Part shown: piece after piece, positions 1 through 40,266 of the stretch
Position numbering within the stretch: the stretch's first letter is position 1
How the letters are laid out: every line of letters starts with the position of its first letter
DNA from: Takakia lepidozioides
Taxonomy: Eukaryota > Plantae > Bryophyta
Reading direction: 5' to 3'
Assembly (NCBI GenBank): GCA_030704615.1
Contig: CM060731.1
Span: 34,100,001 to 34,164,000, forward strand
Length of the DNA: 64,000 nt
Notes under the pieces: model-generated
What the model was told of the DNA's origin: nothing
What the model saw: only the letters and a program-made list of their open reading frames with translations
Database searches by the model: none
Program-made: the position numbers and the translations under genes

Positions 1-623
1 ACAACAGGCCATGCTAGCACAACATCTTATAGCTCAAAGATACTTTTCAACCGTAGTTCAGGAGAAGGCAGGAGCGTACATGCTGTCAGGCTTGCGGGGT
101 ATGGTGATCTCCCACACAAACCAGCTGGAGAGAACAGCTCCCGCAATGTTTCCTCTTTCAACTGCAATAATTGCGCCAAGGGACCAGTCAACCCCTCCAG
201 GACAGGAAGAGGAGAACAGAGACATTAACCCACATCAATTGCAAACAATACTTTGATTTACTTTCAAGAATTGCAGTACCTGAAACGGAAGATTACGGAC
301 AATGAGTCGCCACTTTTTAAATCGTGAACCCTGTGTTTGCCAACTTAGGCCATTATCTGTAACAACACCCACAACCTAGATGTTTGCCTGAATCTCTGCT
401 GGCAGAGAAGTCTTCATTCATCGCCTCACCATTGACAGCATCATCTACTCCTAGCATATTTGCAACCAAGCACTGACAAAGACACTGTGAAGGCACGATT
501 TAAGTGATGCTTCCTCAACATTCAGAACCATGCTAATTGATTAAGATTATAAGAAGGAATTAAGCATAACAAACTATTGACTCGGAACTCATAAAAGCTT
601 CAAGCACACAAGTCTTGCATAAG

Positions 624-1000
624 TCAGAAAGAACCATTTTTCTTAGAGGGGCACAAGAACTGCTCCTACCATTTCACGCCCAGTTCCTTCTTGCTCACTC
701 AGTGTCCAATCCTACGAGCTATCAGACTAAAAGAAGAGAGGCTCGGAAGAAGACAAGTCAGAAAGGGATTTCTATGCTCAAACCATCTCTCTTCTTGACA
801 GAAGCAGCACTCATGATAATCAGTGTCCAGAGAACTGGTTCCTCTTACCCTCCCCTCAAATATGATAGTATTGGCCTAGATAAAAAGAGGCCTGAGAGAC
901 CAGGTCAGAAGGAGGTTTCTAGGGCTCAGCCATCTCCACCTTGCACAGGCACCAAGTAAGGCCCTACACACCACAGCATTTGGTTTCTTTTGCATCCATG
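624..1000 (-). pseudogene. Three degenerate older copies of the snoRNA-like repeat unit
   Basis: (a/g)gtcagaa..ttct(a).. starts at 624, 758 and 905, with guide remnants gcccagttcc (~678) and tcagtgtccag (~820). Box C has decayed. Counterparts lie at 12504-12663. Confidence 0.5.
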
Positions 1001-1019
1001 AAAGTAGGACGCTCAAGGT

Positions 1020-3093
1020 CTTTTCCATGGAGTTTGCAAGGTATTTGGGAGGGTTAAGACTGGCTGCTCAGCTGCTCCCGAACCTGTTCTCATGGCCTAC
1101 TCCAAAATCTCCAAACTACAGACACAAGCAGCGCACACAACAGGGCTTGTGGATTGAGGGTTGGTCCAATCCTCCTTCGCTAAAAGAAAAACTTATTGCC
1201 ATGCCACAAGACAGATCCACGGAGCCGTGCTGGCATGAGTTTTTTGAAGATCCTTCACAAAGGTAGGACAACTGCAATGGCAAGGTGTGGCTTTCTTAAT
1301 GTATAACTAGGGTAGCCTGTGCGGTTGGCCCAAGTGTCGAGTGTCATCCAAGTCCAAGTGCAATCCCCTATGTATCCAAGTGCATCTCCTATGTCGGGGC
1401 CATGTGCGAAGAACTGAAATCGATATACTGCGATTGAGTAGTAATATATCCAATCGTTGTTCCAGGAAAGCCCTACCATTTGCTCTTTCACGAATTTCCA
1501 GCGACCAAAAGCACTCGAAATCCCATATCTCCCACATCGCAGGTCCAAAAAATAGGAGACCAAGTCGGTGCACCCCTCCTCATCGAGGGCTTTCCAACGG
1601 TACCAAGCACCAGGGCTGGGGCCCCGCGGTTCGGGAGATCTCAACGCTACACAACAAAACGAAACAAACAAACAAACAAACTACCTTGCTTCATATATTG
1701 ATATGAAAAAGTTTGTCTGTTCTGCAAACATGGGCTCTTCCTGTCAGTATCATGATTTGTTCTTTTCCGTGGTGTTTCAAAGGTACTTGGGAGGGTCAAC
1801 TTGGTCTTAGGAGGCTATGTGTAAATCTATGGCTGCTCAGCTCCACAGACCAATCCGAGATCAAACACCAACTTGGTCTTAGCAGGCCGTGTTTCAATCT
1901 CTGCATGCTCAGCTGCACCGTGGTGGTTCTCACAGACCAATCCGACATTACCTGACTACAGACACAAGCAGCACACACAAGAGGTCCTTCTAGGTTGATG
2001 GTCGGTCAAATCCTCCATGGGTCATGACACAAGGTCAAGGACAATGTGGTGAGGGCACCTTCTTATTCAACCTATTTCAGCCTGTTTTGCCCTCTCATCA
2101 GACTCGGCCCTCAGATGCATATTGAATTCTGTAAGTTAGCTCGTTGGGTGGATCTGTGGAGGTTTGAAGTGACCTTGACAAGTTACTGCCCATGTGGCAG
2201 CAGGAAAGTATCCCAAAACAGATAACAGATATGAGGAGAAGCTTTGGAATGACCACTTTCCCAATCAAGAGGTCCCTTGGGTTGATGGTTGGTTGAATCC
2301 TCCTTGGGTGGGAGAAAAGCTAGCTGCTTTAAGGACGCAAGAATTGGGTGAGGGCACCTTCTTCAGCATATTTCAGCAATTTTCCCTCTTACAAGGTTTG
2401 ATTACATGGAGCAAAGGATGCGGGAAAGGTTAACGCCCAACTACATCACAATTGTTTGCATTTGCAATGCATGTGTGAGCCTGGCAGACCTGGAAAAGGG
2501 CAAAGAGGTCCATGGTGACATCGTCACAGCTGGAATTGTGCAAGATGTCATTCTGAAAACTGCACTTGTGGACATGTAGGCCAAGATGCGGCAGCATCCC
2601 AGATGCGCAGGGGGTGTTCGACAAGATGGCTGAATGAAATGTGGTGTCATGGAACGCAATGATCACAGGATATGCACAGCATGGGTGTGGGATGGAGGCT
2701 TTGAAGACCTATGAGCAAATAAAGTGGGAAGGGGTGAAACCAAACCAGTCACGTTGGCTTGCATTTGCAACGCGCATGCTAGGCGTGCAGCCCTGCAAAA
2801 GGGCAAAGAGGTCCATGGTGACATCGTCAAAGCTGGAATCGTACAAGATGTCATTCTGAACACTGCAGTGGTGGGCATTTATGCCAGACACCATGACATT
2901 GAGGATGCAAGGGGAGAGTTTGACAAACGAGATTTGGTGTCATCGAACTCAATGATCGCAGGATATGCACAGCATGGGTGCAGGATGGAGGCTTTAGAGA
3001 CCATGAGCAAAGGATGTGGGAAGGGCTGAAGTCCAACCGGGTCATGTTGGTTTGCATTTGCAATGTGTGTCAGGCTGGCAAAGGCAAAGAGGT
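1020..3093 (+). pseudogene. Duplicate, internally deleted copy of the PDF-PPR pseudogene
   Basis: Same motifs as 12670-15695, but the equivalent of ~13870-14995 is missing (junction at ~2392). Confidence 0.75.
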
Positions 3094-4250
3094 ATCTCAC
3101 TCAGGAACACAAGCACTGCTTGTGCCACTCGGTGCCCAGTTCCTTTCATCATTCCTGAGGCCTTCCCTAAGGAGCAATCTAATCAAGTGTTAGTCTAGAA
3201 CCAAACAGGGCTAAAAGACCGCTAAGTCAGACAAGGGTTTTCTAGGCCCAAAGCATCTCGCTCATGGATACAAGCACTGCTCGTGCCACTCAGTGCCCAG
3301 TACCTTTCATCATTCATGAGCCCTTCCCTACGGAGAAATCTAATCAAGTCTTCGTCTAGAACTAAACGGGGATAAAAGACCACTAAGTCAGAAAAGGGTT
3401 TTCTAGGCCCAAAGCATCTCGCTCATGGATAGAAGCACCACTTGTGCCACTCGGTGCCCAGTGCCTTTCATCATTCCTGAGCCCTCCCCTAAGGAGAAAT
3501 CTAATCAAGAATTAGTCTAGAACCGAAGGCTAAAAGACCAGTAAGTCAGACAAGGGTTTTCTAGGCCAAAGCATCTCGCTCATGGATACAAGCACTGGTC
3601 ATGCCAGTCAACATTCTTGAGCCCTACCCCAGGGAGTCCGTTCCAACAAGTGTTAGTCAACAACTAGAGAGGTGGGAAAAGCACTTCTAAGTCAGAAAGG
3701 GGTTTTCTAGGCCCAAAGCATCTCGCTCATGGATTCTAACACTGCTAGTACCACTCAGTGCCCAGTGCTTTTCATCATTCTTGATCCCCTTCCCCAAGGA
3801 GTCAGTTCCAGCAAGTATTAGTCCCACAACTTAAGATGAGCACTTCTAAGTCAGAAAAGGGTTTTCTAGGCCCAAAGCATCTCGCTCATGGATACTAGCA
3901 CTGCTAGTGCCACTCAGTGCCCAGTGCTTTTCATCATTCTTGAGCACCTACCCCAAGGAGTCAGTTCCAGCAAGTATTAGTCCCACAACTAAAGTGGGGG
4001 GCGAATGTACTTCTAAGTCAGGAAAGGCTTTTCTAGGGTCAAAGCATCTCGCTCATGGATACAAGCACTGCTAGTGCCACGCACTGGCCAGTGCCTTTCA
4101 TCATTCTTGAGCCCCTACCCCAAGGAGTCAGTTCCAGCAAATATTATTCAACAACGGGAAAAAGCACTTTTAAGTCAGCGAAGGGTTTTCTAGGCCCAAA
4201 GCATCTCTCTCAGGGACACAAGCCATGCTCATGCTAATCCGTGCCGAGTG
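3094..4250 (-). ncRNA. Duplicate copy of the box C/D snoRNA-like array
   Basis: Appears identical to 15696-16852. Units at 3227-3313, 3388-3474, 3546-~3614, 3692-3778, 3851-3937, 4018-4104 and 4175-~4250, plus a partial unit ending at 3152. Confidence 0.72.
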
Positions 4251-5177
4251 AATTCAAACTCAAAACACCCAATGAACAACCTGGGTTCATGCATACATAC
4301 TGAGTAGAAATCAGCCCCAGCATTGGAGTCATATCTCATGGAAAATCCAATGTCGTTTTTTATCCCAAGAACTTGTGGAAAAACTCCATGATGACCTGAC
4401 AATTCAAACTCGCAGCTATAGATTTATAACTTCGGGTCTTCTGGAAGACCTAAGGAGGTCTGCCACCTAAGGGGCAGATTAAAGACACTTGATTACTGAT
4501 AGAAATAGTTGAAACAATTTTCCTGCTTGACAGAGGTTGGGAGGATAGAATACCTCGCCACCAAGTTGGCGGGCCCAGACAACACCCCCTCCAATTGGCT
4601 GTCGATGAAGAGCCGCAACAGCCTGGTATGCTGCCTTCACAGATCCATACACAATTGCTGCAGCCATTTGCTGGGAAAATGGACTGGCTGGGAGCCACCC
4701 GTATGGAAATCTAGGGCGTTCTTTGAGAAAGGTAAGATGCAAAACCTCTTGGCACGTTACTTGTTCACTTCTCGGTTGTTCACAAACACTGTGTTGTAAT
4801 ACATCACGTAATTTTTGCAAGTTGAACAAGCATTGCAGAAAGACAGTCAGATATACAAGCTGAGAATCTATACACTGGCATTCCTTGAAAAGGACAATGG
4901 GAGATAAGATTCTTCATCCTTTGGTGACTCATGTTCTTGACTTTCTCAATAAATTATATGAAAATGCTTTAGGCCTCTCCTTTGACATACATGTCTAGTT
5001 CTTGGCAAACCTGGAGTAAATGAATCACTAGCCTGACGAAAGAATTCACCAGATAACTTCAACCACACTCTACAGATGCCAACATTACTTAACATAGAAG
5101 CAATGAAAGGATTGACTTGTGCTTCACTAATTTCTACTTACTGACCAAACACCTAAAATCTATCTAAAATCTTGCAA

Positions 5178-8100: not shown

Positions 8101-11100
8101 CAATAAAAGCCAGAAACAAAACAGTAGAAGGAGAAACCTCCATTCAAAAGCTTACTTGGTGGCCGGGTGGAGCACCATGCGGAATGACCTAACCTCGCCG
8201 AAGACGGAGAAATGGCGACGCATTTCTTGAACATTGGCATCTACTGGCAGGTTCCTGATAAACACAGTCCTTTTCAGACTTTCCTGCCGATCATCCTTCA
8301 ACTTTGCAACAGGGGGTTGAACTCCACCACCCTTTTTGGAAGCATTCTGTACTGACATTGGCACCTTCTCCTCAAGTGAAACTCCCAATGAGGATTGTTG
8401 GTTCTGATCAGGGACCTCCTCACCACTTTCCTCACCTTCCCTGACGGACTGGCGTTGATCCTTAGCAATTTTACATAGAACTCTTTGCACCAAATCCTTT
8501 TCATTGACAGTATCACATGGTTTGGCCTTCTCCTTCTCTTCCTCAGAAATGCTTTCAAAGCTCTCAGACTCATCACTGTCCTTTTCCAAGCCCTTAGCCA
8601 ATTCAGCATCTCTATTGCTATCCTTCTGTGTCTCTTTAGTTCCATCCCTACCCTCAACTTTCCCTTTTTTGTTGACTTTGTCCATAGCTTTCCTGTATGT
8701 TTGGTCGTCATTGTCATCTTCATCTTCACTAGCAGTGTCTTCGTCAGACATGTCACTATCTTTGTGTGTTTTTTCTGTGGGAAAGGCAAGGCATTAGTAT
8801 ACGGAGAACCTGGGTTAAAGGAAACAAACCTCAGGGAATAAGGGAAGGGAGCACAGAGAAATGAAATGAAATGAAATGAAATGGTGCTTTATAACGTCCG
8901 CGGAAAGCTCATAGAGCTTATGGGACAAAATGGAAGAAAACATGAGAGAGGAACAAATCCAGAAACCACAATTAATGTTCTAGCGATTGTCTAAGGGTGA
9001 AGGCCTCGTGCAGGTAGGCTGCCAAGCATTTTTGATCCTCATAGTGAAAGACATCAGTGAGAGTTTGGGTTCCACTGAATAAACAGTGGAATCGCCCACG
9101 GATCTCTTAGTATAGAGGGCAGTAGAAGAAGAAGTTTCAATTTCCTTGCTGCGCCCTATGCAAGCTGGACATAGGCGGTCCTCCCGTTGCAGGTTTTTAC
9201 AACTGCCAGTCTCTATCCGTAGGTGAATTCAAGGTCAGGTGGTGGGGTCAGCTGCAACATATGCCCAACACCAGATATCCTAAGTTATTCGACTCTATAT
9301 CTTGGAAACAGGACCGCCCTGTCAAACAGGCTAAGTCCTGGCAGAAGAGAGTAGAAGAGATCCTCAAGGACCTGGACCTGGATCCGCAAGTCTTGACCCT
9401 GCTGGATAAATCTGACTTAGAGGCTGTAGTGTCCTCAGCCATGTCTGTTGCCATGAGATTGTCTGATGAAAATGAAGTTAGGCAGAAAACTTCCCTGAAC
9501 TTGTTTCCAGTCTGTGACGTGGGGGAGGACATCTTGGATGACCTCAAGGGTCTACCCACTCTCGGCACTAGACTGAAATTTAAACTCAGGGCAGGAAGCC
9601 TACCTTTGAACAGCAAACAGAAGCAGAGAGGAAAGGGAGAGTGCAATTGCCCGTTGTGTGGGCAATCTGAAGACAATATTCATTTTCTGATACACTGTCC
9701 GGGGTTCTCTCACCAAAGAGACGCTCTCTTCAAATCTATTAAGGGAATTGTGCCTGTACCCCTGTTCACCAACTTTGAAAGTCTCGAGGCTGAGCCAAAA
9801 GCCCAGGCCCTCCTGAGGCCTAGTTTTTGGGCAAATCACACACAGCAGATTGATGCTTGTGTGAAGGGATTTCTAGAGGATATCTGGAAAACCCGGATTA
9901 ATTCTTTATATGGAGGTAAGTCTTACTACCAACGTCAGCCCCTGACAGAGGTAGGTTCTGTCCCTTTTGTTCCCGCTCAAACTGGGCGCGGGGTCAATGG
10001 CCACAAGGCTACGGCAAACAACGTCTTATGAGTACAATCTATCCGTAGGTTGTGGGAACCCACCCTGACCCGCCCCAATGCCCTCAGGAGGGAAGGAGAT
10101 AAGGGTGCTGAAAGGTAATTTGGTCTCAAGATTCTATCATCGCGGAGCACCAAGAATGTCTCTCGATAGAAGTGGAGCTTTGTCGTGAGATTTGGTAGCT
10201 TCCAAGTTCTCTTGACATGTAATTCCATAAGCTCTCTCCTAATGAGTCTGTTGCAGTCATGTCTGGATGTGATGTCCACCTCATCTGGATTCATTGGTAA
10301 TAGGAAAGCGGTAGAGAGTCCGTTACGTTGAAATAAACTGTCCACTCGAGCATACCAGGACCTGAAACCTGCAGCTTTGAGCCTCATAGATGTTGTGAGG
10401 GTCCTTGCCACTAGCCCTTTGGGTGGAAGGGCCTGTAATCTATGGAGAAAGATTGTAAGCCGGAAGAGGGCCTCGGATTGCAATGGTACACATGCGAACT
10501 CTGCACCTAGGATCTGAGATGGAGTTGTGCTCCTGGCGCCAAGCATTGCTTGGAGAAAAGATGACTGTAATGGTTCCAAATTCTTTTCCCACCAGGAGAC
10601 AGGGACACCAGAAAGAGAGAGAAATAAAATGAAATGGTACTTTATAACGTCCGTGGGAGCTCAAAGAGCTTATGAGACGAGAGGAAACGAAATGAAATGA
10701 CATGGTACTATATAACGTCCGCGGAAAGCTCAAAGAGGAAGATAGAAACAAGAGAGGTGAGAGAGGAAGAAGAGAGAGAAACCTGGAGCGGCATTTGCAT
10801 CTAAAATAGTCTCATACTTCTTCTTGCCCACAGCCCAGTCCACAGCTACAGGCCTCTTCCCAACAGTCTTCCCATTGACAACTTTTATAGCCTGCAAATC
10901 CCTTCACATCCGTCAACAAATCTCAACTATATTATGGCTTGGAACTTCAACCCCCTCAGAACAATCAAACTACCACATACTCACTCATAAACATGTTTTA
11001 TCTTGCATGCTTGCTGAAGATTTTTTCTGAGATCTTCTAGGTCAAGCTCCTACCCAACCCTCCTGTAGTTGTCTGAGTACATTTACACCTTCCAAACTGT

Positions 11101-14100
11101 GAAAAATGCTCTTCCGAACCAAAAAAGCCCTGCGTCTCATTGACACCAAAGTCAGTCTCACAAGCCGACATTCAACTTGTTCAACATCCTCAAGGTCTGT
11201 GGACTTATCCTGACACGTCAGGTATTGCAGTGAGATTCTCTTCTTGAGACCCGAAAATCGTCCAGAGACTTACTTTCTCTGCATCAGCCTTCCTGGTGAA
11301 ACCAACAAATGCAAACCCTTTGGACCTGCCAACAAGTGGGATGAATTTAAACTGCAGATTCGTGTAATAAGTTACAGACAGTTTATAACTTGGAATAATA
11401 CTTAGAAATGTTAATAAATCAAATCGAAGGTAACAACCATGGTTGAACTACCGCATTTGGCAGAGCAAGTCCATGGCTGCATCCTTCAGCAGACTCAATG
11501 CATAGCAGCATATTTTGCTTCTTCATCACTTCTCAGATTAGCACTGGAAAGTTTCCTTGCCTACTCAGGCATACTAGAGCAGACCTTAGAATGGAACAAA
11601 GGTATCTGACGAAAGATAGCTTCTGTCGATCAAGAGAATCATGTCTGAAACCCATGTCTCTTAACTTTAGAATAGAAAGGTTTCTACCAAGAACCTCAAG
11701 GAAAGATATGCTGTTCACCACCATGACAGCTAGGTTTGATGATGAAAGTGCAAAACCTAATTTTCTAGAGCTATCAGAAAAAGTCACCTAACAGCTAACA
11801 CGGAGAAGGGGACGATTCCAGTCACAAAGTATTTGAGGACAACTTGCAAACCAGATGGTCAGCTTGGCTCAGTAGGAAATTTCTCACAACAAGCCATGCT
11901 AGTTGAAACTGCTGAGGAAGCCCAACATCTTATAGCTCAAAAGTCTGTAGTTCAGGAGAAGGCAGGAGCGTACATGCTGTCAGGCTTGCGGGGTATGGTG
12001 ATCTCCCACACAAACCCAGCTGGAGAGAACAGCTCCCGCAATGTTTCCTCTTTCAACTGCAATAATTGCGCCAAGGGACCAGTCAACCCCTCCAGGAAAG
12101 GAAGAGGAGAACAGAGACATTAACCCACATCAATTGCAAACAATACTTTGAATTACTTTCAAGAATTGCAGTACCTGAAACGGAAGATTACGGACAATGA
12201 GTCGCCACTTTTTAAGTCGTGAACCCTGTAAAATGCCAACTTAGGCCATTATCTGTAACAACACCCACAACCCAGATGTTTGCCAGAATCTCTGCTGGCA
12301 GAGAAGTCTTCATTCATCGCCTCACCATTGACAGCATCATCTACTCCTAGCATGTTTGCAAGCAAGCACTCAGTAGTTAGGAGTAATTAACAAAGAAGGC
12401 GTGATTTCAGTGATGATTCCTCAACATTCAGAACCACGCTAATTGATTAAGATTATAAGAAGGCACTAAGCACTAAAAGAAGAGAGGCTCGGAAGAAGAC
12501 AAGTCAGAAAGGGATTTCTATGCTCAAACCATCTCTCTTCTTGACAGAAGCAGCACTCATGATAATCAGTGTCCAGAGAACTGGTTCCTCTTACCCTCCC
12601 CTCAAATATGATAGTATTGGCCTAGATGAAAAGAGGCCTGAGAGACCAGGTCAGAAGGAGGTATCAAGGTCTTTTCCATGGAGTTTGCAAGGTATTTGGG
12701 AGGGTTAAGACTCGCTGCTCAGCTGCTCCCTGTTCTGTTCTCATGGCCTACTCCGAAATGTCCAAACTATAGACAGAAGCAGCGCACACAAGAGGGCTTG
12801 TGGATTGAGGGTTGGTGCAATCCTCCTTCGCTAAAAGAAAAACTTATTGCCATGCCACAAGACAGATCCACGGAGCCGTGCTGGCATGAGTTTTCTGAAG
12901 ATCCTTCACAAAGGTGGGACAACTGCAATGGCAAGGTGTGGCTTTCTTAATGTATAACTAGGGTAGCCTGTGCAGTTGGCCCAAGTGTCCAGTGTCATCT
13001 AAGTCAGGTGCAATCCCCTATGTATCCAAGAGCAGCTCCTATGTCAAGGCCCATGTGTGAAGAATTAAAATCGATTTACTGCGATTGATAAAACCCATTT
13101 ATTTTTTTCCATGAATTTATTGAGTAGTAATATATCCAATCATTGTTCCAGGAAAGCCAGCGAATGTTTCACGAATTTCCAGCGACCAAAAAAACTTGAA
13201 ATTCCATATCTCCCACACCACAGGTCCAAACAATTATGAGACCAAGTCGGTGCACACTTCCTCATCGAGGGCTTGCCACCATGGGCACAATAACATAGGC
13301 ACTTCCTGTCAGTATCAGGATTTGTTCTGTTCCGTGGTGTTTCAAAGGTACTTGCTAGGGTCAACTTGGTCTTAGGAGGCTATGTGTAAATCTATGGCTG
13401 CTCAGCTCCACAGACCAATCCGACATTACCTGACTACAGACACAAGCAGCACACACAAGAGGTCCTTCTAGGTTGATGGTCGGTCAAATCCTCCATGGGT
13501 CATGACACAAGGTCAAGGACAATGTGGTGAGGGCACCTTCTTATTCAACCTATTTCAGCCTGTTTTGCCCTCTCATCAGACTCGACCCTGAGATGCATAT
13601 TGAATTCTGTAAGTTAGCTCGTTGGGTGGATCTGTGGAGGTTTGAAGTGACTTTGACAAGTTACTGCCCATGTGGCAGCAGGAAAGTATCCAAAAACAGA
13701 TAACAGATATGAGGAGAAGCTTTGGAATGACCACTTTCCCAATCAAGAGGTCCCTTGGGTTGATGGTTGGTTGAATCCTCCTTGGGTGGAAGAAAAGCTA
13801 GCTGCTTTAAGGACGCAAGGTCAATGGTGAGGGCACCTTCTTCAACATATTTCAGCAATTTTCCCTCTTATCAGAGTCGTCATCAATTTTCATGTTGAGT
13901 TCTGCAAGTGATCTCATCAGGATCTACTGTGGTATGGAGTGATTTTGACATGTTGCTGCCAATATGGCAACAGGCCAATATCAAAAAACAGGAAACAGAG
14001 ACGAGGAGAAGCTTTGGAAGAATGTTTTTCGACCCCAGTCAATGGTGGGACAATCGAGGAAAAAAGGTGAATTCCTGGTAGATTACAGCGAGAAGCAGAC

Positions 14101-17100
14101 AACAAGATGCATTGCAAGGTTTTCTTGGAAATTGTCATCTCCTCTCTCTCCCCAGCACATTTTTTAACTGTCGGCTGCTAGCAGCAAGGGGAGGATCTAC
14201 ACATTATTGGTGCGGGATCTGAATTTGCACAATGTGCTTGCCACTTTTTCAAAGGCGGCACTTCGGTGTGCGTGTTGTATCCATGCTGGCTGGCAGCCGG
14301 CACTTCGAACATATGTTCAATTTGTAGGGATCGCTAACAAGAAAGTAGCGTTCCTGCAGGGTAGCTGAAGCTCCATGCCCAAGCCAATCTTGTTCCATAA
14401 GACCAGCAAAGAAGACCAGCAAATAATACCTGCCACTAGACCTCCTTTCCCCAATTTCTCCTCTTAACTATATCCTAGGGATAGCTGAAGGAGCAGGGAT
14501 GGAGTGTGGGTCCAGATTCATCCGAGAGGGGCAGATTTCAAGAACAAGAGTACCCTGATTCCCTGTGGATTGATAGCTACAATAAACCTGCATGGGTATA
14601 TGGTCAACTGGAAGCAGTAGCAACGGCACAGTTTGACAAAATCAGGAACCTCCACCATGATAAAACAGGATCCAGAGAGGGGGTACACAATACCTCTTCT
14701 GGCACTTCTGGGCATGTGAGGAGGCTATGTGAGGCAGAGAGACTCAAAGGGACTATACAGATTTTGAACGAAGGAGGTATTTCAGCAGATTCTCATACTG
14801 ATATCTCTGTCTCTCGCATAACTGCATCAAAAATGCAAGGCCTGGAACCCAGAAAGCAGGTGCGCACTGCACACTCACATTATCCAAAGTGGATTCAAGT
14901 CCAACGTTTTTTCTACAAAACACCTTTGTCAACAAGTTTGTTAAGTGCAAGAGCATTGTGGATGCACACCAAGTGTTCAACAGAATGCCTGAACAAGGTT
15001 TGATTACATGGAGCAAATGATGCGGGAAAGGTTTAAGCCCAACCACATCACAACTGTTTCCATTTGCAATGCATGTGTGAGCCTGGCAGACCTGGAAAAG
15101 GGCAAAGAGGTCCATGGTGACATCGTCACAGCTGGAAATGTACAAGATGTCATTCTGAAAACTGCACTTGTGGACATGTAGGCCAAGATGCGGCAGCATC
15201 CCAGATGCGCAGGGGGTGTTCGACAAGATGGCTGAATGAAATGTGGTGTCATGGAACGCAATGATCACAGGATATGCACAGCATGGGTGTGGGATGGAGG
15301 CTTTGAAGACCTATGAGCAAATAAAGTGGGAAGGGGTGAAACCAAACCAGTCACGTTGGCTTGCATTTGCAACGCGCATGCTAGGCGTGCAGCCCTGCAA
15401 AAGGGCAAAGAGGTCCATGGTGACATCGTCAAAGCTGGAATCGTACAAGATGTCATTCTGAACACTGCAGTGGTGGGCATTTATGCCAGACACCATGACA
15501 TTGAGGATGCAAGGGGAGAGTTTGACAAACGAGATTTGGTGTCATCGAACTCAATGATCGCAGGATATGCACAGCATGGGTGCAGGATGGAGGCTTTAGA
15601 GACCATGAGCAAAGGATGTGGGAAGGGCTGAAGTCCAACCGGGTCATGTTGGTTTGCATTTGCAATGTGTGTCAGGCTGGCAAAGGCAAAGAGGTATCTC
15701 ACTCAGGAACACAAGCACTGCTTGTGCCACTCGGTGCCCAGTTCCTTTCATCATTCCTGAGGCCTTCCCTAAGGAGCAATCTAATCAAGTGTTAGTCTAG
15801 AACCAAACAGGGCTAAAAGACCGCTAAGTCAGACAAGGGTTTTCTAGGCCCAAAGCATCTCGCTCATGGATACAAGCACTGCTCGTGCCACTCAGTGCCC
15901 AGTACCTTTCATCATTCATGAGCCCTTCCCTACGGAGAAATCTAATCAAGTCTTCGTCTAGAACTAAACGGGGATAAAAGACCACTAAGTCAGAAAAGGG
16001 TTTTCTAGGCCCAAAGCATCTCGCTCATGGATAGAAGCACCACTTGTGCCACTCGGTGCCCAGTGCCTTTCATCATTCCTGAGCCCTCCCCTAAGGAGAA
16101 ATCTAATCAAGAATTAGTCTAGAACCGAAGGCTAAAAGACCAGTAAGTCAGACAAGGGTTTTCTAGGCCAAAGCATCTCGCTCATGGATACAAGCACTGG
16201 TCATGCCAGTCAACATTCTTGAGCCCTACCCCAGGGAGTCCGTTCCAACAAGTGTTAGTCAACAACTAGAGAGGTGGGAAAAGCACTTCTAAGTCAGAAA
16301 GGGGTTTTCTAGGCCCAAAGCATCTCGCTCATGGATTCTAACACTGCTAGTACCACTCAGTGCCCAGTGCTTTTCATCATTCTTGATCCCCTTCCCCAAG
16401 GAGTCAGTTCCAGCAAGTATTAGTCCCACAACTTAAGATGAGCACTTCTAAGTCAGAAAAGGGTTTTCTAGGCCCAAAGCATCTCGCTCATGGATACTAG
16501 CACTGCTAGTGCCACTCAGTGCCCAGTGCTTTTCATCATTCTTGAGCACCTACCCCAAGGAGTCAGTTCCAGCAAGTATTAGTCCCACAACTAAAGTGGG
16601 GGGCGAATGTACTTCTAAGTCAGGAAAGGCTTTTCTAGGGTCAAAGCATCTCGCTCATGGATACAAGCACTGCTAGTGCCACGCACTGGCCAGTGCCTTT
16701 CATCATTCTTGAGCCCCTACCCCAAGGAGTCAGTTCCAGCAAATATTATTCAACAACGGGAAAAAGCACTTTTAAGTCAGCGAAGGGTTTTCTAGGCCCA
16801 AAGCATCTCTCTCAGGGACACAAGCCATGCTCATGCTAATCCGTGCCGAGTGAATTCAAACTCAAAACACCCAATGAACAACCTGGGTTCATGCATACAT
16901 ACTGAGTAGAAATCAGCCCCAGCATTGGAGTCATATCTCATGGAAAATCCAATGTCGTTTTTTATCCCAAGAACTTGTGGAAAAACTCCATGATGACCTG
17001 ACAATTCAAACTCGCAGCTATAGATTTATAACTTCGGGTCTTCTGGAAGACCTAAGGAGGTCTGCCACCTAAGGGGCAGATTAAAGACACTTGATTACTG

Positions 17101-20100
17101 ATAGAAATAGTTGAAACAATTTTCCTGCTTGACAGAGGTTGGGAGGATAGAATACCTCGCCACCAAGTTGGCGGGCCCAGACAACACCCCCTCCAATTGG
17201 CTGTCGATGAAGAGCCGCAACAGCCTGGTATGCTGCCTTCACAGATCCATACACAATTGCTGCAGCCACTTGCTTGCATCCATCTTTTGCCAACCCTACC
17301 ATTTGTTTGCACATAGAAAACAGTAAAATATGCATGCCAATTACTTGATTAGAACCAAAAACTACACTCACTTTTTTTCTCTTCCCCTCTCTAGCGGTCC
17401 ATGCCAATGCCAAGGTTGTGGCCCTCCTCAGGAGAATTCTGGAATCAACATAAACAACCTGCCAGCAAGCAAACACAAGGTGCCAACCCTGGCCCATGGC
17501 CACCCTCAGATAACTTTCCCTATGTAGCATTTCCACTCTTGAGAAACTCTTCAATTAGAAGACTATGCCAACATACAGATGTACAAGCCAAACTCATGCT
17601 AGAATACTGTTTTCTTAGAGGTATGGAGATATTTCCATATTTCCAATCAAAGGTAACCATGCTAGAATGCAAGGAGACTAGTAAACTCTAAAGAGAAAAC
17701 CCAGCCCTGGTAGAGAGAACTGCCTACCACGACTGGCAAGCTCTGCCTCCTCCAATGGATGACGGATGTCTTCTACAGTTCCCAGCTTTCTGGCCTTTGC
17801 AAGCACAGGTTCTACCATCTCTGCGCTTTCCAACCCACCTACCACGATTGTTCGTGCAGGTCTGCAAGCAAATAATATAAGGATTGAATAAACCTCTTGC
17901 TATTTTGTATGCAAGTGTCAGATGTGACAAATACTGGTTACATTCTGTTTGTAGGTTGTGAACGATTAAAATAACAAGGAAAAATGATCTACCACAGACG
18001 TGCCTTATCAGACCAACACAGAGTTATGAGGAAGCTTTGGACCTGCAATACTTCAAAGCTCCTCGGCCACTTCTGATCCCCACACTAGTTGTAGGACCAA
18101 ATCATCAATTAGTTGTCCTTCACTCAAGTATCAGATATTTCGGTACCATAAAAAGAATTGAGTCATGGATTGTGTCACCTTTGTTTATCAGAGCTCTGGC
18201 CGTCATCACGCGTCCGCTTCCTACTGGCAGGTTTGTTTCCAACGTGACTGCGAACCCCTGCTGGTAGCATTCAATATAGTGAGCTTCATAATGCAGTAAC
18301 ATCCAATACAAGCCACCGGGAATTCATACAGTGGTGATTAACATGTTTCGAAGAATGCACGACGGATCCAAATTCCCCACACAACCAACTTGTCAAAGGA
18401 TTGACCATTTACATTGGGGCAATAGCAGGCAGAGAAATTTCAGGGGTTGTTTGTTGAACAGGTTCTGCTCAGAAAAGAATTAGACTGAGCATCCATGGAC
18501 ACAAACTGAAGTATCACCAACCATTATTACATTGGAGATGAGAGTTGTGCTCCGGGTGGGAAGATTAACAGTTTACTTCTAAGGCTGCTCTACTTGCTAC
18601 CATGAAACATAAAGAAGATCTAAAGCGCCTTTGCTACCACCTGTCCACTATGCTTGCAAAGGCCAAGCTTCTTCATATGTACTGCGTTCTAACTCCAATT
18701 TGGTTGAGGTCAAATCCCCTCATGCTACTGAACAACCCACTGAAACATACCAGTCTTTGACTTTTTACTCTCCTCATGCACATCTTGTGCAGCTTCCATC
18801 CCAGTCTGCACATTTTCCAAAGACTTCCGCTTCCTTTGCTTGCGCTTTGGATCAGCAGGATCACCTCCATTTTCCTCAATTGCATCTTTCTGGAGTACAT
18901 CCTCTTGTACTCCATCTTGATTGGAGTCTGCAAAACAAAACACTCAATACTTCGGACACTGGCTACATAACAAAACAATCCCTGTTCAGCATCAAGCCTT
19001 TCACCATCTCTGACAAAGTTGCAAACCTCAGCCATCCTTAAAAAATAGAATCAATCTGAAAAGCATGGTAACTTGGGTTTCTCAATGGAGATTAACATTG
19101 TGGCACAGAGAACAACTTCAACAGGTGTGACTAACCTTGAGGTTTTGGGGGAGGGAACCGCTGGTCAAGAGTTGCCCTCCGCTTGGCAACCTCCACCTTG
19201 ATCTTGCGGCCTTGGAGCAACACTCCATTCTTGATTTCAACAGCACGATTGGCATCCTCTGCCACAGCACTGATCATCCCCCACACCACCAACTTCTTTT
19301 ACGACAGGTCCTGACTATTTATCTGCCAACTCAAAGAACCCCCTCCAGGAGTCTCATAATGTACACTTCGATTCTTCAGGACCTGCACTGGCACTCATTC
19401 TAAACTGTGTACAGTATGCTATTATTAAATGCTCGATCTGTGAAAAAGAGAACGGCATGTGCATTGGCCAAAGGGCAGACAGCATGCACACCAAACACTA
19501 AGACCTTGAATTACCAATGCCAGTCCTGTTAATTGAAGTGCCCAGGTGACCAAAGGCTATGTCCCCACACCAAATCCGCCACGAACAGCTGAATTGCCTA
19601 CAATCTAACGAGCACTTCACCGAACCAGAGCAAGCTGGATTCGCATAGTAGTTCACATTCACATTTTAAAGTGAAGGATGACTCACAACTGCACAAAGCC
19701 AAAACCTCGGTGATGCTCAGTGCCTGCAAATAACCAATCAACCAACAAAATCAGTCTCCAAGATCCCATCGCCAGAATGTTGTCATGCAGCCCGTAGTTC
19801 CCGATTTTTATCACTAAATATCCCTCTGAACCAGAAAATGAAGGTGGCAAAGAGATAATTCTTCCAGTTGGCCAGTGAATTTCCGTTATCGTCCAATCAG
19901 ATAAAAATTAACACACACAGACGCAGATACAGCACAAAATGCAGCAGCTTCGCGGGATATGCAAAAGATCCACAAGATCTATGCAGAGTCGAGGCGTGGA
20001 GTTGCAAAAGCCCACCTTTTGTTTTAACAGTAAAGCAATGTCTAACAGGGCCCACTTCGCTGAAAATATCCTCTAACTGCCGCACAACACCCCAGTCAAC

Positions 20101-20936: not shown

Positions 20937-23900
20937 ATGAGTCGAAGAATGTGGCCCATCTGCAGGATCCCCAAGACATTCTCGCGTCGTCATCTTGCAT
21001 GGTGGGTATGTGTGCCTGCAATGCTTATGTTGCTTTTTCTGTTTCCAACCACTTTCTTCCTTCGGCCCAGTTATCTGAGGTCGCCGGGGGTCGATGTTTC
21101 GACCCCACCTCTTCCTCTGCAAGGGAAATCTCTCGACGGACCCGTTCAAGCCTTAATTGATGCGATAAGAGAGGCCACCAGAGCAGCTTCTGGTGGTCAG
21201 ATACCGACCTTCTCGGAGCACGACGCCCAGGTAATGCAAGTAGTTTGTTGCTAGCAGAATGTGATTAGGACGTTTTTCTGATTGAGTGGAGCTTTGATAA
21301 ATGCCGCATGTCGCTTGGGACTGGCGTTGACTACATATAACCAAAAATCCCACCGGAATTCAGATTATGCCCTCAATCTGCAGGCTAGTCTTGATTGTAC
21401 GAAATTCGGAAGACAGTTTGGAGCTTAATTCCCAGTAATAGTACAAGGCATCAGGTTACCAGTGTGAGAAGCAAATCATAATAGTTTGAATCTTTCCAGA
21501 ATTTGGTGTTTCCCTCTTTCTTGTCTCTCTTTGTCTCACACCTCAATGTCACACTGTCTGAGACATTTTTGGCTGTTAGAGAGCTAGGGCTGTTTTTCAC
21601 CCCGCCAGAAGAGGATATGACCCAGAATTAATAGTCAAGGCTAAGTCTGGCAATGTATTGCACTCATTCTGTCCCCATGCCTCGTTCTTTTAGCCTTCAG
21701 CACAAGGCTATGCCTTTTAGTCTATGGCCACAAGGCTCCGGTAAACAATGTTGTATGAGTACGCACTTTTAGCCGGTGCCAGATTAAAAAAAACTGCATG
21801 GAATCTTCTGGAAAAATAAATATGACAAGGTATGGTAAACCATGGTTTGTGAGTTGCCATTGATGTCGAATGATCCTCCTTACACAGTTGGACCAACCAG
21901 GTAGAACTATGCCTTCGAACTTTTCAAGGTCTCAAGTTTTCTGAAGGATTGTATCGTCATGGTATACTTCTTAGTGTCAATTAACTTGTAGCTCCTCTCT
22001 GCCAGACTCACCAGTAGGTCAATATACTTGGCATTTTTTCTTTTGGAACCTAGTTTCTTTTTCAACTTTGTAGCATTCATACCACTTCTAAACATTCATC
22101 CCCAAAGCGTTTGTTGTTTCAAAAAAAGAATCCGTCCTCAAACCTTGTTCTGAAATTCAGTAGTTCTAACAGTATGCTGTGATTGTGAAGGGAAGATGTG
22201 GGAGAAACACAACCCCTGCCAAAGCCGCAAAGAGCTAGGACCCAGATATGACCGTAGACCACATGCAAAAGTCCTAGACTTGAATCCTCAATGGGCTGAG
22301 GTCCTCAATGAATATGCAGCCCTCCACCGTGCCTGCAGGGGTAGCATCAACGGCATTTCAAATTATTTTCTTGCCAATGACACTAGCAGCAGTTGCAAGT
22401 TCTTGGTGGCAGACATCCATGGAGTTGGCCTGGGAAACAAGGTCTCGCTCTTGACCTCAGCTGTTTTATATGCGGTCTTGACACAAAGAGTACTTCTCAT
22501 AAACGCATATTCGTACATTCCATGGACAATGTGTCAACCCTTTCCGGGCTCGTCATGGCTACTGGACGGGGGATTCCCACTCCCTCAGAAAGGTTGGGAG
22601 AGCACTCTCTGGGGAAAATGGACTGGCTGGGAGCCACCCGTATGGAAATCTAGCGCGTTCTTTGAGAAAGGTAAGATGCAAAACGTCTTGGCACATTACT
22701 TGTTCACGTCTTGGTTATTCACAAACACTGCTTTGTAATACATCTCTTTTTGCCAGTTGAGCAAGCATTGCAGAAAGGCAGTCAGATATACTAGCTGAGA
22801 ATCTATACACTGGCATTCCTTGAAAAGGACAATGGGAGATAAGAGTCGCAGGACTCAACTTTCTGTAGTACCTATTCAAGGTGGTACCGACCAGTGCATG
22901 GGCATGGTGATATATGGGCAAGGTAAAAGAAGGTTGAAAGGAGGTGGCAGTAGCTCTCCATGGTTACCTGCTGGCAGGGGCAGTGCTTTGCCAAATTAGG
23001 TACCTAGAGACTTCCGAGTTCATAGAGAGGACCATGCAACACAAATACCTTGGCCATTGAAAGTGTCTGTGAAAATGCTGCTATCCATATCAGGTCAAGG
23101 AGGCGCTAATAGTTTTGCTGGCTCTGGCTGACATATGTTGGCCCTTCTCTCTTGAAACAGTAGAATAGGAACACCATTCGTGTATGCTCCCGTGGTGGTG
23201 CCCGATGTTAAACACTCAAGGGCAGTGCTACTCATGAGACAATGTTCTTGTTTCCAGCTGTGTTAAATCCTCTTCTGTGACTGTGTTAGGTGTTGACTTC
23301 TCAAAAGCAGGGAGGCAGACATCTCCCCTGTATGCAGTGAAGATTGATCATTCTCATCCAGAGACAAAGAGATTCTTTTGCAACACAGAACAAGCATATG
23401 CAACCCAAGTTCCTTGGATGTATTTTACTGGGTGTCTCTACTTCCTACCGAAGCTTTTTGCCGTCCCTGCCTTTCGGCCAGCTCTAGAGGCACTCTTCCC
23501 TGACCCTTCGTTGGCTCTCACCCACCTTTTGCGAACGGTGATGCTTCCACTCAACTCCATATGGGAGCAAGTTAAACAAGAGGACAATGCCCGATTTAAA
23601 GGTGCTCATCGTAGCGTTGGTATTCAGGTATGGTTTTTACTAAACGAGAAAAAAATATTCTATCTTAAGTTGCTGGTGCTACAGTGGGTTACATGGTTGG
23701 GTATGTACCCTGCCAGCCATTGTTCCTAGAGTAGACAAGCAGAGGCCAGCCATGGGGTTCCAACATCATCAGGGTGTAAAACGTAGTCTGGAATTTCCAT
23801 TGGATTGCAATGGGCGGGAGAGAATGTGCTCATAAGACGTTTTTTGTCGTAGCCTTTTGGCCATTGACCCCACACTCAGTTTGAGCAGAACACAAAGGGA

Positions 23901-25088
23901 CAGAAACTACCTTTGTCAGGGGCTGACGCCGGTAGTATGACTTACCTTGGAGCAGACTATTAATCCGAGTTTTCCAGATATCCTCTAGAAATCCCTTCAC
24001 AAAGCATCAATATGCTGTGTGTGGTTTGCCCAATCACTAGGCCCCAAAAGGGCCTGGGCTTTTGGCTCAGCCTCAAGACTTTCAAAGTTGGTAAACAGAC
24101 CTTGATGGATTTGAAGAGGGTGTCTCTCTCATGAGAGTACCCAGGAGAATGAATCAGAAAATGAATATTGTCTTCAGGTTGCCCACACAACCGGCAATTG
24201 CAATCCCTCTTTCCTCTCTGCATCTGTTTGCTGTTCAAAGGTGGGCTTCCCTCCCTGAGTTTAAATTTCAGTCTAGTGCTGAGGGTGGGTAAACCCTTGA
24301 GGTCATCCATGATGGCCTCTCCCATTAGCCTCTACGTCAGATTTATCCAACAGGGTGAAGACTTGTGGGCTTAGATTCAGATCCTCTTGGTCATTCACCA
24401 ATTGGCACTCAATTGGCTGACTTTTGATGGAATGGTGCAGGTTCGATATCTTTGGGGTAGGAGTGTTGTCTTCAACAAGGCCACAAGCAAGAGAGCGAAT
24501 GCCCACATCAAGCAGTGTGCTGCTGAAAATAATATCCTCCCCAACATTATTGGCAAAGGGAACCCCAAAAAGTTTGTGCCCAATGAAAGCTCAAATTCAA
24601 CAGATATTCCTATGCACCGCGAAATACAAGTCCTCGTCACGTCCCTCCATACATCTCTCTATGAGGATTTGACAGAGACCTATTCACGGCATGAAACTGT
24701 GACTGGCGAGACGGTGCGTGTGGCACAATTGACCCACAACAGTAAACAGACCTTTAGCGCTGGTGAAGATAACCAGGCACTGGTGGAGGTTCTGCTGCTC
24801 AGTTTTGTTGATGATCTTTTTGTCACTCCTTTATCAACATTTGGTGGTCTGGCACAAGCCTACGGAGCGCTTACCCCTCGGTTCATTGAAATGAAGAAGA
24901 ACTATAGGTCTTGTGTGCAGGCTCAGACAGTAGATCTCTGCTATCAAAGGGCACAATTGTACTATGATTGTCCTCATGACTGGGATGTTGATTGGAAGCC
25001 CATTGAAAGGGTAGTTCCTTACATCAAAAGATGTTTGCCCATTGAAGAGGGTGATGGGGTACAATTAATGCCACCTCCCTTAAGCTGA
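20937..25088 (+). CDS. Xyloglucan alpha-1,2-fucosyltransferase family (GT37), about 584 aa type II membrane protein
   Basis: Exons 20937-21230, 22196-22670, 23290-23627 and 24441-25088 join in frame with GT-AG sites. N-terminal TM segment; motifs GLGNKVSLLTSAVLYAVLTQRVLL, CQPFPGSSWLL, YFLPKLF, GIQVR, VLVTSL, ALVEVLLLSF..TPLSTFGGLAQAYG. Confidence 0.9.
23828..24390 (-). mobile_element. Degenerate LINE 3' fragment of the same family as 9225-10037, in FUT intron 3
   Basis: ORF 24325-23960 DDLKGLPTLSTRLKFKLREGS..CRLCGQPEDNIHFLIH, with the same 3' terminus (cttatgagcac). A further 3' stub lies at ~21715-21763 (+). Confidence 0.8.
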
Positions 25089-33357: not shown

Positions 33358-33503
33358 CTGGTTGTCCCGCCAACACTATATTTGGCACCGAGGGACCTAT
33401 GCAAAAGGCAGGGCCATATTTTACATCTTTGGCGTACCTCGCCAAACCTCCGCGTACACATGCACGCCCAAGCACTGGGGAGCAAGTCTCGTGTGTGCAC
33501 ATC

Positions 33504-39967: not shown

Positions 39968-40266
39968 ACATCGCACAAAGTTATGAAGAACACACATTTT
40001 TGGGATATGAATAGCAGGTGTGGCATAGCCTGGAACCACCACGTGGCTTCCGTAGACTGGCCAGCCCAGCTTGGCGCTGGATTTAGCGTGACCCCGGTGG
40101 ACATCCTTCCGCCAAACTCCACGCCATGAGCAGCTTGGTGGGGCCGATGGCGGGACACCGTTGGAGATGCTTTAAGGCGTCAGCTCAAGCTGTAAGAATA
40201 AACAATCTTGCATGCAACAATACTAAAAACAGTGACACTTTTGTTGTATGCAGTTGGAGGTGAGAA

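What the first reader, a model, noticed from the sequence alone, without database searches (positions are those of the whole stretch)
15696..16852. Intronic 'satellite' is a tandemly amplified box C/D snoRNA array inside a ribosome-biogenesis gene
Seen: a ~160-bp-period repeat. On the RBM28 sense strand each unit holds an 87-nt core bounded by ATGATGA and CTGA with an internal CTGA/CCGA, and cores are better conserved than spacers. Known: AGCACTGGGC followed by a D' box is the guide of yeast snR76 and human SNORD88. It pairs with LSU rRNA UGCCCAGUGCU, and the +5 rule points to the third C (yeast Cm2197 equivalent). Inference: a homo-polycistronic array of about 8 copies (plus older decayed ones) of one snoRNA is hosted in Nop4/RBM28, itself a 60S assembly factor. 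Plant clusters usually mix families with few copies each, so this amplification looks unusual.
Basis: partly seen in the sequence, partly recalled or inferred. Interest (0 to 1): 0.85.

Follow-up and report, generated by a model that had tools for sequence, protein, structure and literature searches.

The report
Tandem snoRNA genes inside RBM28 intron
The 160-bp repeat is a real tandem array of one rRNA-methylation guide RNA (the plant counterpart of yeast snR76 and human SNORD88) in an intron of a ribosome-assembly gene; only about four of its eight units look functional, and the layout is a high-copy example of a known plant arrangement.

Summary
Confirmed. Window 15692-16864 (minus strand) holds eight ~161-bp units. 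Four of them (u3, u4, u6, u7) carry an intact 87-nt box C/D core. The other four are decayed, deleted or truncated, and older remnants lie at 12500-12662.

Rfam aligns the intact cores end to end with yeast snR76 (46.4 bits, E 1e-8). This is below the gathering score of 55.

The D' guide pairs 11 bp with the conserved LSU rRNA stretch UGCCCAGUGCU. The +5 rule selects the third C, which is yeast Cm2197 and Arabidopsis C2198 (guided there by snoR118). [quoted passage not shown]

The array lies in a 4.9-kb intron of an RBM28/Nop4 orthologue. A spliced transcript contig ends at the donor site. Short contigs from two studies cover unit u3 (one carries u4-type letters), while no contig lies on the rest of the array or on the intron between it and the donor.

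New points:
- An identical second array sits 12.6 kb away (3090-4253) in a truncated gene copy.
- A 3-kb PPR-like insertion splits the array.
- RBM28 genes of Riccia, Selaginella and Cephalotus carry no such snoRNA.

The scan has unchecked notes of other tandem snoRNA arrays, and of one snR76-type copy, elsewhere in this genome. Intronic same-family clusters of 2-3 copies are already known in plants, so novelty is modest.

The parts
16773..16864 (-). Unit u1, decayed: no C box, D' reads CGGA; the 3' half and D box are kept
   Evidence: Alignment A1; snR76 21.4 bits, E 0.15
16617..16710 (-). Unit u2, probable pseudogene: C and D boxes kept, guide mutated, D' box lost, 3' element mutated
   Evidence: snoR118 29.5 bits; guide duplex only -14.6 kcal/mol
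16453..16539 (-). Unit u3, intact 87-nt box C/D core: C box, 11-nt guide, D' CUGA, C' UGAGCGA, 3' accessory element, D box
   Evidence: snR76 43.9 bits, E 6.4e-8; core listing; a 153-nt contig of run X2 covers 16442-16592 with no differences
16294..16380 (-). Unit u4, intact core
   Evidence: snR76 46.4 bits, E 1.3e-8; the 174-nt contig of run X1 carries u4-type letters at 16496, 16500 and 16511
16145..16227 (-). Unit u5, pseudogene: C box reads ATGTTGA, and a 17-nt deletion removes the guide
15990..16076 (-). Unit u6, intact core with D' CCGA; the guide keeps pairing through one G.U
   Evidence: snR76 38.9 bits, E 1.7e-6; duplex -21.8 kcal/mol
15829..15915 (-). Unit u7, intact boxes; two guide positions changed, both to G.U-compatible letters
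   Evidence: snR76 36.2 bits, E 9.9e-6; duplex -19.8 kcal/mol
15692..15754 (-). Unit u8, first 63 nt only, cut off by the PPR-like insertion
   Evidence: nhmmer hit to model positions 1-63
12500..12662 (-). Old decayed remnants on the far side of the insertion: a possible rest of u8 (weak match) and one further unit
   Evidence: nhmmer hits 12596-12662 (model 76-152, E 1.8, weak) and 12500-12577 (model 13-95, E 1.9e-10); sequence
12663..15691 (+). About 3 kb of PPR-like sequence on the opposite strand that interrupts the array; not part of the snoRNA system
12226..17155 (-). Host intron of 4930 nt, with donor GT at 17155-17154 and acceptor AG at 12227-12226
   Evidence: A spliced 3476-nt contig ends at 17155; homologue residues are colinear across 17156 and 12225; sequence
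17156..17296 (-). Upstream RBM28 exon (end of an RRM)
   Evidence: tblastn 83% identity to the Riccia RBM28 homologue P0014
12175..12225 (-). Downstream RBM28 exon
   Evidence: tblastn 62-81% identity to the three homologues (81% to P0005); sequence
3090..4253 (-). Second copy of the whole array, inside a truncated duplicate of this part of RBM28
   Evidence: Self-BLAST 2391-4672 against 14993-17274, 99.6%; no differences between 2541-4666 and 15143-17268; nhmmer

Best explanation
This is a cluster of box C/D snoRNA genes of a single family, all inside one intron of the RBM28/Nop4 gene and on its sense strand. The family is the functional counterpart of yeast snR76, human SNORD88 and Arabidopsis snoR118.

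Proposed mechanism (inferred from the named families, not shown here):
- RNA polymerase II transcribes the host gene.
- The intron or pre-mRNA is cut in the spacers and trimmed back to the ends protected by the C/D snoRNP. This is how plant polycistronic and intronic clusters are processed.
- Three or four units (u3, u4, u6 and probably u7) give snoRNAs of about 90 nt.
- Their D' guide pairs with 25S rRNA at UGCCCAGUGCU, and fibrillarin methylates the third C (the equivalent of yeast Cm2197 and Arabidopsis Cm2198).
- A second conserved element, GGGCCUAGAAAA, pairs with the rRNA just upstream of the target and probably assists methylation.

The array grew by unequal crossing-over and is in birth-and-death turnover. 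Four of the eight units are dead, older remnants persist, and a PPR-like insertion has split it. Part of the gene, with the array, was later copied 12.6 kb downstream.
For: Anatomy and homology:
- Full-length Rfam alignments to snR76 for four units, E 1.3e-8 to 9.9e-6. Boxes C, D', C' and D are in place, and both the guide and the 3' element match the consensus.
- The guide forms an 11-bp duplex with the consensus of 89 LSU rRNA loci. Energy is -21.8 kcal/mol against -7.8 +/- 2.4 for shuffles, with 0 of 2000 shuffles as good. One such locus is confirmed as eukaryotic LSU rRNA.

Constraint on the cores:
- Core identity is 0.92 against spacer identity 0.68 among the intact units.
- Of 13 variable core sites, 10 fall in linkers. 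The two guide changes keep pairing as G.U. Boxes C, C' and D and the 14-nt element are invariant (Fisher p 0.03).

Function of the family elsewhere:
[quoted passage not shown] The same geometry is found here.
- The Arabidopsis 25S C2198 methylation is mapped and assigned to snoR118 (PMC8053127).

Intron position and RNA:
- A spliced contig stops at the donor site. Short contigs lie on unit u3 in two studies, and none lies on the other array units or on the intron between the array and the donor (only 15600-17200 was laid).
- Exons are colinear with RBM28 homologues. Their best solved relative is yeast Nop4, and the Selaginella homologue is named RBM28 by NCBI.
Against: - No match reaches an Rfam gathering score: snR76 46.4 against 55, snoR118 29.5 against 44.
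- No discrete RNA of about 90 nt has been shown. The contigs are 153-174 nt, include spacer, and come from runs whose RNA nature is only guessed. They fit a precursor as well as a mature snoRNA.
- The intact units u6 and u7 have no contig of their own.
- The energy of the accessory pairing is not significant by itself (p about 0.1).
- This species' own 25S rRNA and its methylation state were not available.
- Half of the units are dead, so part of the amplification may be neutral.
Confidence: 0.8

Rival explanations
1. The array is a dead relic. A snoRNA gene was amplified by unequal crossing-over into a satellite-like repeat that is no longer processed into functional snoRNA. The working copy of this guide lies elsewhere in the genome.
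For: Four of the eight units are visibly broken and more remnants exist. A 3-kb insertion has been tolerated inside the array. An unchecked scan note reports a single snR76-type snoRNA in a PTI1 kinase intron of the same genome. No mature-size RNA has been shown.
Against: Four cores keep every box, the guide and the accessory element unchanged, while their spacers have diverged to 68% identity. The guide changes are wobble-compatible. Contigs from two studies lie on unit u3 and none on the other array units or the intron between the array and the donor.
Confidence: 0.12
2. The amplified units have a role beyond rRNA methylation. They might act in cis on the splicing or level of the RBM28 pre-mRNA as a feedback between snoRNP supply and 60S assembly, or serve as a source of snoRNA-derived small RNAs.
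For: The host is itself a 60S assembly factor. The copy number is high for a plant same-family cluster. The array sits about 290 nt from the donor site.
Against: Nothing in the sequence calls for it. The conserved parts are exactly those needed for canonical guiding. RBM28 genes of three other plants lack any such snoRNA, so the host gene does not depend on it.
Confidence: 0.05
3. The second, identical array (3090-4253) is an assembly artefact and not a real duplication.
For: There are no differences over 2126 bp, while the flanking duplicated segments are only 93-98% identical.
Against: The flanks of the two copies differ by substitutions, by a 1.1-kb indel and by different decayed units. This fits a real, older duplication with a recent gene-conversion tract. 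Neither reading affects the status of the primary array.
Confidence: 0.2

Closest known systems
Arabidopsis snoR118 (Rfam RF01424), yeast snR76 (RF01209) and human SNORD88A-C / HBII-180 (clan CL00071)
   Same: Same D' guide with the same spacing to the D' box, and so the same target C in LSU rRNA. Same box order and a similar size (87-nt core, about 96 nt aligned). Same conserved 3' element as in the snR76 consensus.
   Different: Scores are below the Rfam gathering cut-offs. Gene context differs. Yeast snR76 sits in the mixed snR72-78 polycistron. Arabidopsis snoR118 is a single gene in a mixed, non-intronic cluster snoR161/snoR66/snoR118. From my own knowledge, the human copies lie one per intron. 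Here 8 or more copies of the one family share a single intron.
Plant intronic snoRNA gene clusters, for example Arabidopsis snoR155a/b/c in RPL23A intron 2, snoR100a-c and snoR79a-c; rice intronic clusters
   Same: Several snoRNA genes within one intron of a protein-coding gene, often one tied to translation or ribosome biogenesis. Same-family copies sit side by side with short spacers (PMC8351944).
   Different: The known same-family examples read here have two or three copies and are H/ACA. This array has eight units plus remnants of a C/D family, half of them decayed, and the whole array is duplicated.
Mammalian SNORD115/SNORD116 tandem arrays
   Same: Tens of tandem copies of one box C/D family with birth-and-death turnover and copy-number variation (titles and abstracts).
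   Different: From my own knowledge, those are orphan snoRNAs, with one snoRNA per intron of a repeated non-coding host unit. Here the guide has a canonical rRNA target, and all units share one intron of a coding gene.

Membership tests
Box C/D snoRNA | C box (RUGAUGA) near the 5' end and D box (CUGA) near the 3' end | tested here: met
   AUGAUGA and CUGA bound the 87-nt core in u3, u4, u6 and u7. Not met in u1, u5 and u8.
Box C/D snoRNA | Internal D' and C' boxes | tested here: met
   D' is CUGA (u3, u4, u7) or CCGA (u6). C' is UGAGCGA, invariant in the four intact units.
Box C/D snoRNA | Short terminal stem joining the 5' and 3' ends | tested here: inconclusive
   Only 2-3 of the 4 model pairs form (AAG with CUU) in the Rfam alignments. 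Single-sequence folding is not better than shuffles, z -0.5 to +1.0. This is usual for this class.
Box C/D snoRNA | Guide of 10 nt or more, complementary to rRNA, ending next to D or D' so that the fifth paired position is the target | tested here: met
   An 11-bp duplex with UGCCCAGUGCU of LSU rRNA. The fifth position is the third C.
Box C/D snoRNA | Accumulates as a discrete small RNA bound by fibrillarin, NOP56, NOP58 and 15.5K | not testable with these tools
   Only contigs of 153-174 nt covering unit plus spacer were seen. No small-RNA reads were available.
snR76 / SNORD88 / snoR118 (Rfam clan CL00071) | Score at or above the curated Rfam gathering cut-off | tested here: not met
   Best snR76 score 46.4 against 55; best snoR118 score 29.5 against 44. 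The E-value is still 1.3e-8 with a full-length alignment. The cut-off is a curation rule, not a biological feature.
snR76 / SNORD88 / snoR118 (Rfam clan CL00071) | D' guide directed at the C equivalent to yeast 25S C2197 / Arabidopsis C2198 | tested here: met
   Guide and D' spacing match the snR76 consensus exactly. Pairing is confirmed on real LSU loci. Arabidopsis assignment from PMC8053127 and PMC2875012.
snR76 / SNORD88 / snoR118 (Rfam clan CL00071) | Conserved extra base-pairing element next to the target | tested here: inconclusive
   The element matches the snR76 consensus and is invariant in the intact units. It pairs 4+5 bp with AUUUCUGCCC, overlapping the guide's target as the paper describes for snR76. 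The energy is not significant against shuffles (p about 0.1). That this is the same element the paper mutated is my inference.
snR76 / SNORD88 / snoR118 (Rfam clan CL00071) | The target C is 2'-O-methylated in this organism, dependent on this RNA | not testable with these tools
   Needs RiboMeth-seq and a deletion experiment.
Plant intronic polycistronic snoRNA cluster | Lies in a spliced intron, on the sense strand of the host gene | tested here: met
   A spliced contig ends at the donor. Flanking exons are colinear with RBM28 homologues on the minus strand.
Plant intronic polycistronic snoRNA cluster | Several snoRNA genes separated by short spacers and lacking their own promoters | tested here: inconclusive
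   Spacers of about 70-80 nt separate the cores. Plant promoter elements could not be tested, because the only promoter scan available is bacterial.
Plant intronic polycistronic snoRNA cluster | A polycistronic precursor is processed into the individual snoRNAs | tested here: inconclusive
   Contigs that include spacer (16442-16592 and 16394-16567) fit precursor fragments but do not bridge two cores.

The most novel reading that the evidence does not exclude
Tandem amplification of single snoRNA families inside introns of ribosome-biogenesis genes may be a recurrent, lineage-specific way of organising snoRNA genes in this (probably bryophyte) genome. Here it has reached 8 or more units, followed by a segmental copy kept identical by gene conversion. 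The truncated downstream copy may be on its way to becoming a non-coding snoRNA host.
Probability: 0.25. Interest if true: 0.5.

Novelty: new member of a known kind. Interest (0 to 1): 0.35.

Why it matters
The finding annotates an otherwise anonymous intronic "satellite" as snoRNA genes. It assigns a guide to one conserved 25S rRNA methylation in a plant lineage with little snoRNA annotation; the closest RBM28 found is from the liverwort Riccia sorocarpa.

It also shows that both the guide and the accessory pairing element of snR76 are shared between fungi and this plant. This supports the view that extra base-pairing is an old, functional part of this snoRNA.

The array is a compact natural record of snoRNA birth and death: intact, wobble-variant, box-mutated, deleted, truncated and interrupted copies lie side by side. 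It could serve to study copy-number dosage and processing of many snoRNAs from one plant intron.

It does not reveal a new kind of system.

Tried and rejected
- Rfam at gathering threshold over the whole window gave no hit. Only the E-value mode showed the family.
- Single-sequence folding of four units gave energies no better than shuffles. This is expected for box C/D RNAs and is not informative.
- The duplex energy of the accessory element against shuffles was not significant.
- The bacterial promoter/terminator scan and the plasmid BLAST are irrelevant to a plant locus and gave nothing.
- A search for relatives of the array through the spurious ORF that each unit encodes found no candidate. 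Such a blank means little.
- The contigs of the two closest exon-level protein hits (L118, L119) were too short to reach the intron. P0005 and P0088 are not on record as genes.
- The Chlamydomonas and rice snoRNA papers (PMC2390600, PMC156054) are not held. What I say about them rests on citing papers and on my own knowledge.
- I considered and rejected a TE or satellite with chance boxes. The full-length snR76 alignment, the exact guide and the selective conservation of functional elements exclude it.
Full report
**The observation**

Tandem Repeats Finder reports an array at 15696-16825 with period 161, 7.1 copies and 80% matches. Read on the minus strand, the region holds eight units, located by their C boxes and by alignment.

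Four units carry an 87-nt core with all expected parts:
- u3, 16453-16539
- u4, 16294-16380
- u6, 15990-16076
- u7, 15829-15915

Each core reads, in order: AUGAUGA, a 13-nt segment, CUGA or CCGA, a short hairpin, UGAGCGA, a 27-nt segment, and CUGA.

The other four units are damaged:
- u1 has no C box.
- u2 has lost the D' box, and its guide and 3' element are mutated.
- u5 has ATGTTGA in place of the C box and a 17-nt deletion that removes the guide.
- u8 stops after 63 nt.

So "each unit holds an 87-nt core" is true for half of the units. Cores are better conserved than spacers: identity 0.82 against 0.70 over all units, and 0.92 against 0.68 among the intact four.

**What the units are**

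Rfam gives no hit at gathering threshold. In E-value mode the four intact units align over the whole length of the yeast snR76 model, at 46.4, 43.9, 38.9 and 36.2 bits (E 1.3e-8 to 9.9e-6; gathering score 55). Weaker matches go to the fungal Afu_513 and to plant snoR118 of the same clan.

Two stretches match the snR76 consensus exactly. One is the guide with its D' box (GCACUGGGCACUGA). The other is a 3' element (GGGCCUAGAAAACC).

To test the target on real sequence, I fetched eukaryotic rDNA loci from metagenomes with a 20-nt pattern. One locus was confirmed as eukaryotic LSU rRNA at 2650 bits. The consensus of 89 loci around the site is invariant over TGTGATTTCTGCCCAGTGCTCTGAATGTCAA.

The guide of u3, u4 and u6 forms an 11-bp duplex with UGCCCAGUGCU. 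Its energy is -21.8 kcal/mol, against -7.8 +/- 2.4 for shuffled guides, and none of 2000 shuffles did as well.

The literature agrees. AtsnoR118 (98 nt, D' guide, 12 bp, 25S Cm2187 in that paper's numbering) is listed as the homologue of snR76 and HBII-180A-C (PMC2875012). RiboMeth-seq maps a methylation at Arabidopsis 25S C2198 and assigns it to snoR118 (PMC8053127).

**Signs of constraint**

Among the four intact cores, 13 of 87 positions vary:
- Ten lie in linkers, mostly the D'-C' hairpin loop.
- Two lie in the guide, and both keep pairing as G.U. The u7 duplex is still -19.8 kcal/mol.
- One turns D' CUGA into CCGA.
- Boxes C, C' and D and the 14-nt 3' element do not vary at all.

Functional positions against linkers give Fisher p 0.03. 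This is modest because there are only four sequences.

The 3' element pairs with AUUUCUGCCC as 4+5 bp with a 2-nt bulge. That stretch lies immediately 5' of the guide's target and overlaps it. The energy alone is not significant (p about 0.1). The geometry, however, is what van Nues et al. describe for snR76: a conserved extra base-pairing region whose rRNA target overlaps that of the guide, and whose mutation lowers methylation at L2197 two- to three-fold (PMC3116282). That the element here is the one they mutated is my inference from the shared consensus.

**The host gene and the intron**

Stored RBM28-like proteins were laid on the window with tblastn: P0021, P0005, and P0014 from Riccia sorocarpa. 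They map colinearly to minus-strand exons from about 20380 down to 5181. P0021's best solved relative is yeast Nop4 (E 1.9e-51), with human RBM28 also hit. The Selaginella homologue P0106, whose gene was scanned below, is named RNA-binding protein 28 by NCBI.

The exon ending at 17156 is followed by GT. The next homologous residues resume at 12225, after an AG. This gives an intron of 4930 nt, roughly the seventh by my exon count, which was not verified against a cDNA.

Independent support comes from run X1. A 3476-nt contig matches 17155-17200 exactly and leaves the genome at the donor, as a spliced mRNA would. I did not build a joined coding model.

No other Rfam snoRNA family appears anywhere in the gene. 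As far as Rfam can tell, the cluster holds a single family.

**Expression**

Only contigs were available, from runs whose RNA nature is a guess; the spliced contig argues that X1 is RNA. I laid only 15600-17200, which holds the array and the donor-side part of the intron. There, contigs lie at two places only: the PPR-like end (from paralogues, 4-9 differences each) and unit u3.
- X2 has a 153-nt contig at 16442-16592 with no differences.
- X1 has a 174-nt contig at 16394-16567. Its three listed differences are the u4 letters (compared).

Two studies therefore hold these units, while no contig lies on the other units or on the intron between the array and the donor. The contigs include spacer, do not bridge two cores and say nothing about a mature 90-nt RNA. 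Processing remains inferred.

**History of the array**

A profile of the units finds weak remnants at 12596-12662 (model positions 76-152, E 1.8) and 12500-12577. Unit u8 ends at model position 63, exactly where that sequence begins. The simplest reading is that an insertion split an older, longer array.

The spacers fall into two types, u2-u4 and u5-u7. This points to stepwise duplication.

**A second array**

Self-comparison shows that 53-4672 duplicates 11947-17274, so a second array lies at 3090-4253. Between 2541-4666 and 15143-17268 there is not one difference. The other duplicated segments are 93-98% identical, and the copies also differ by a 1.1-kb indel and in their decayed units.

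The duplicate begins about 500 bp beyond the last RBM28 coding exon, and it holds only two exon copies plus part of a third, one of them frameshifted. It is either an older partial duplication with a recent conversion tract over the array, or an assembly artefact in that tract. The tools here cannot decide.

**Relatives**

The RBM28 genes of Riccia sorocarpa (L121), Selaginella moellendorffii (L122) and Cephalotus follicularis (L123) were fetched with 3-kb flanks and scanned with Rfam in E-value mode. No snR76-like or other snoRNA hit appeared.

Their orthologous introns are short: about 250 bp in Riccia, about 50 bp in Selaginella, and at most about 750 bp in Cephalotus. The residence of this snoRNA in RBM28 is therefore specific to the window's lineage.

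In Arabidopsis the family is a single gene in a mixed, non-intronic cluster. The window's exons are closest to the liverwort protein (70-87% identity). The source is thus probably a bryophyte, but it was not identified.

**Comparison with what is known**

Plant snoRNA genes are typically clustered and polycistronic, and intronic clusters are known in rice (PMC8351944). Arabidopsis has same-family intronic clusters of two or three copies: snoR155a-c in RPL23A, snoR100a-c and snoR79a-c. Duplication into multiple isoforms is described as the rule in plants and Chlamydomonas (PMC7671301; PMC5122169).

Hosting in a translation or ribosome-biogenesis gene is also the common pattern. What stands out here is copy number (eight units plus remnants, and the whole array twice) and the visible turnover.

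Unchecked notes of this scan report other tandem snoRNA arrays in the same genome (an RRS1 intron; a 306-bp triplication) and a single snR76-type copy in a PTI1 kinase intron. If these hold, the array is one instance of a genome-wide habit and not the only source of this guide.

**Verdict**

It is a new member of a known snoRNA family in a known kind of plant gene arrangement, at unusually high copy number, with about four working copies at best. I put the functional-array reading at 0.8. Interest is moderate to low (0.35). The finding is good annotation and a neat evolutionary snapshot, not a new system.

Noticed in passing
window 53-4672 against 11947-17274: Partial segmental duplication of RBM28 (two exon copies plus part of a third, the array intron and the PPR-like insert), lying just downstream of the gene's 3' end. 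A 2126-bp tract is identical between the copies, while the flanks are 93-98% identical. This could be a gene-conversion tract or an assembly artefact. At 4672/4673 the copy joins sequence resembling the + strand ORF at 22196-22738.
   Followed up: partly
window 12663-15691 (+ strand): About 3 kb of PLS-type PPR-like sequence, itself internally repeated (2456-2770 against 2759-3063 in the duplicate, 80%). It sits inside the snoRNA array and truncates unit u8. It looks like an insertion into the intron and not a nested intact gene: the reading frames are short and broken.
   Followed up: partly
window 33500-39970 and 55160-61280: Two related Ty3/gypsy chromodomain LTR retrotransposon copies, about 95% identical. 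ORFs carry gag, protease, RT, RNase H, integrase and chromo domains.
   Followed up: partly
window 9520-10044 against 23817-24324 (inverted): An 85%-identical inverted pair encoding a cysteine/histidine-rich ORF (256 aa at 9261-10031) with no Pfam match. It is possibly the tail of a non-LTR retroelement. One copy lies inside an RBM28 intron.
   Followed up: no
window about 16895-17010 (- strand): A possible still older, heavily decayed unit between the donor site and u1. It repeats the GAGTTTGAATT start of u1 and has CCATGAG and CTGA at the expected spacing. The unit profile did not detect it.
   Followed up: no
window 649-936 (- strand): The duplicate keeps more of the old remnants than the primary copy: a 3' half-unit at about 895-935 and one extra decayed unit at 649-730. 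The primary copy has therefore suffered deletions since the duplication.
   Followed up: partly
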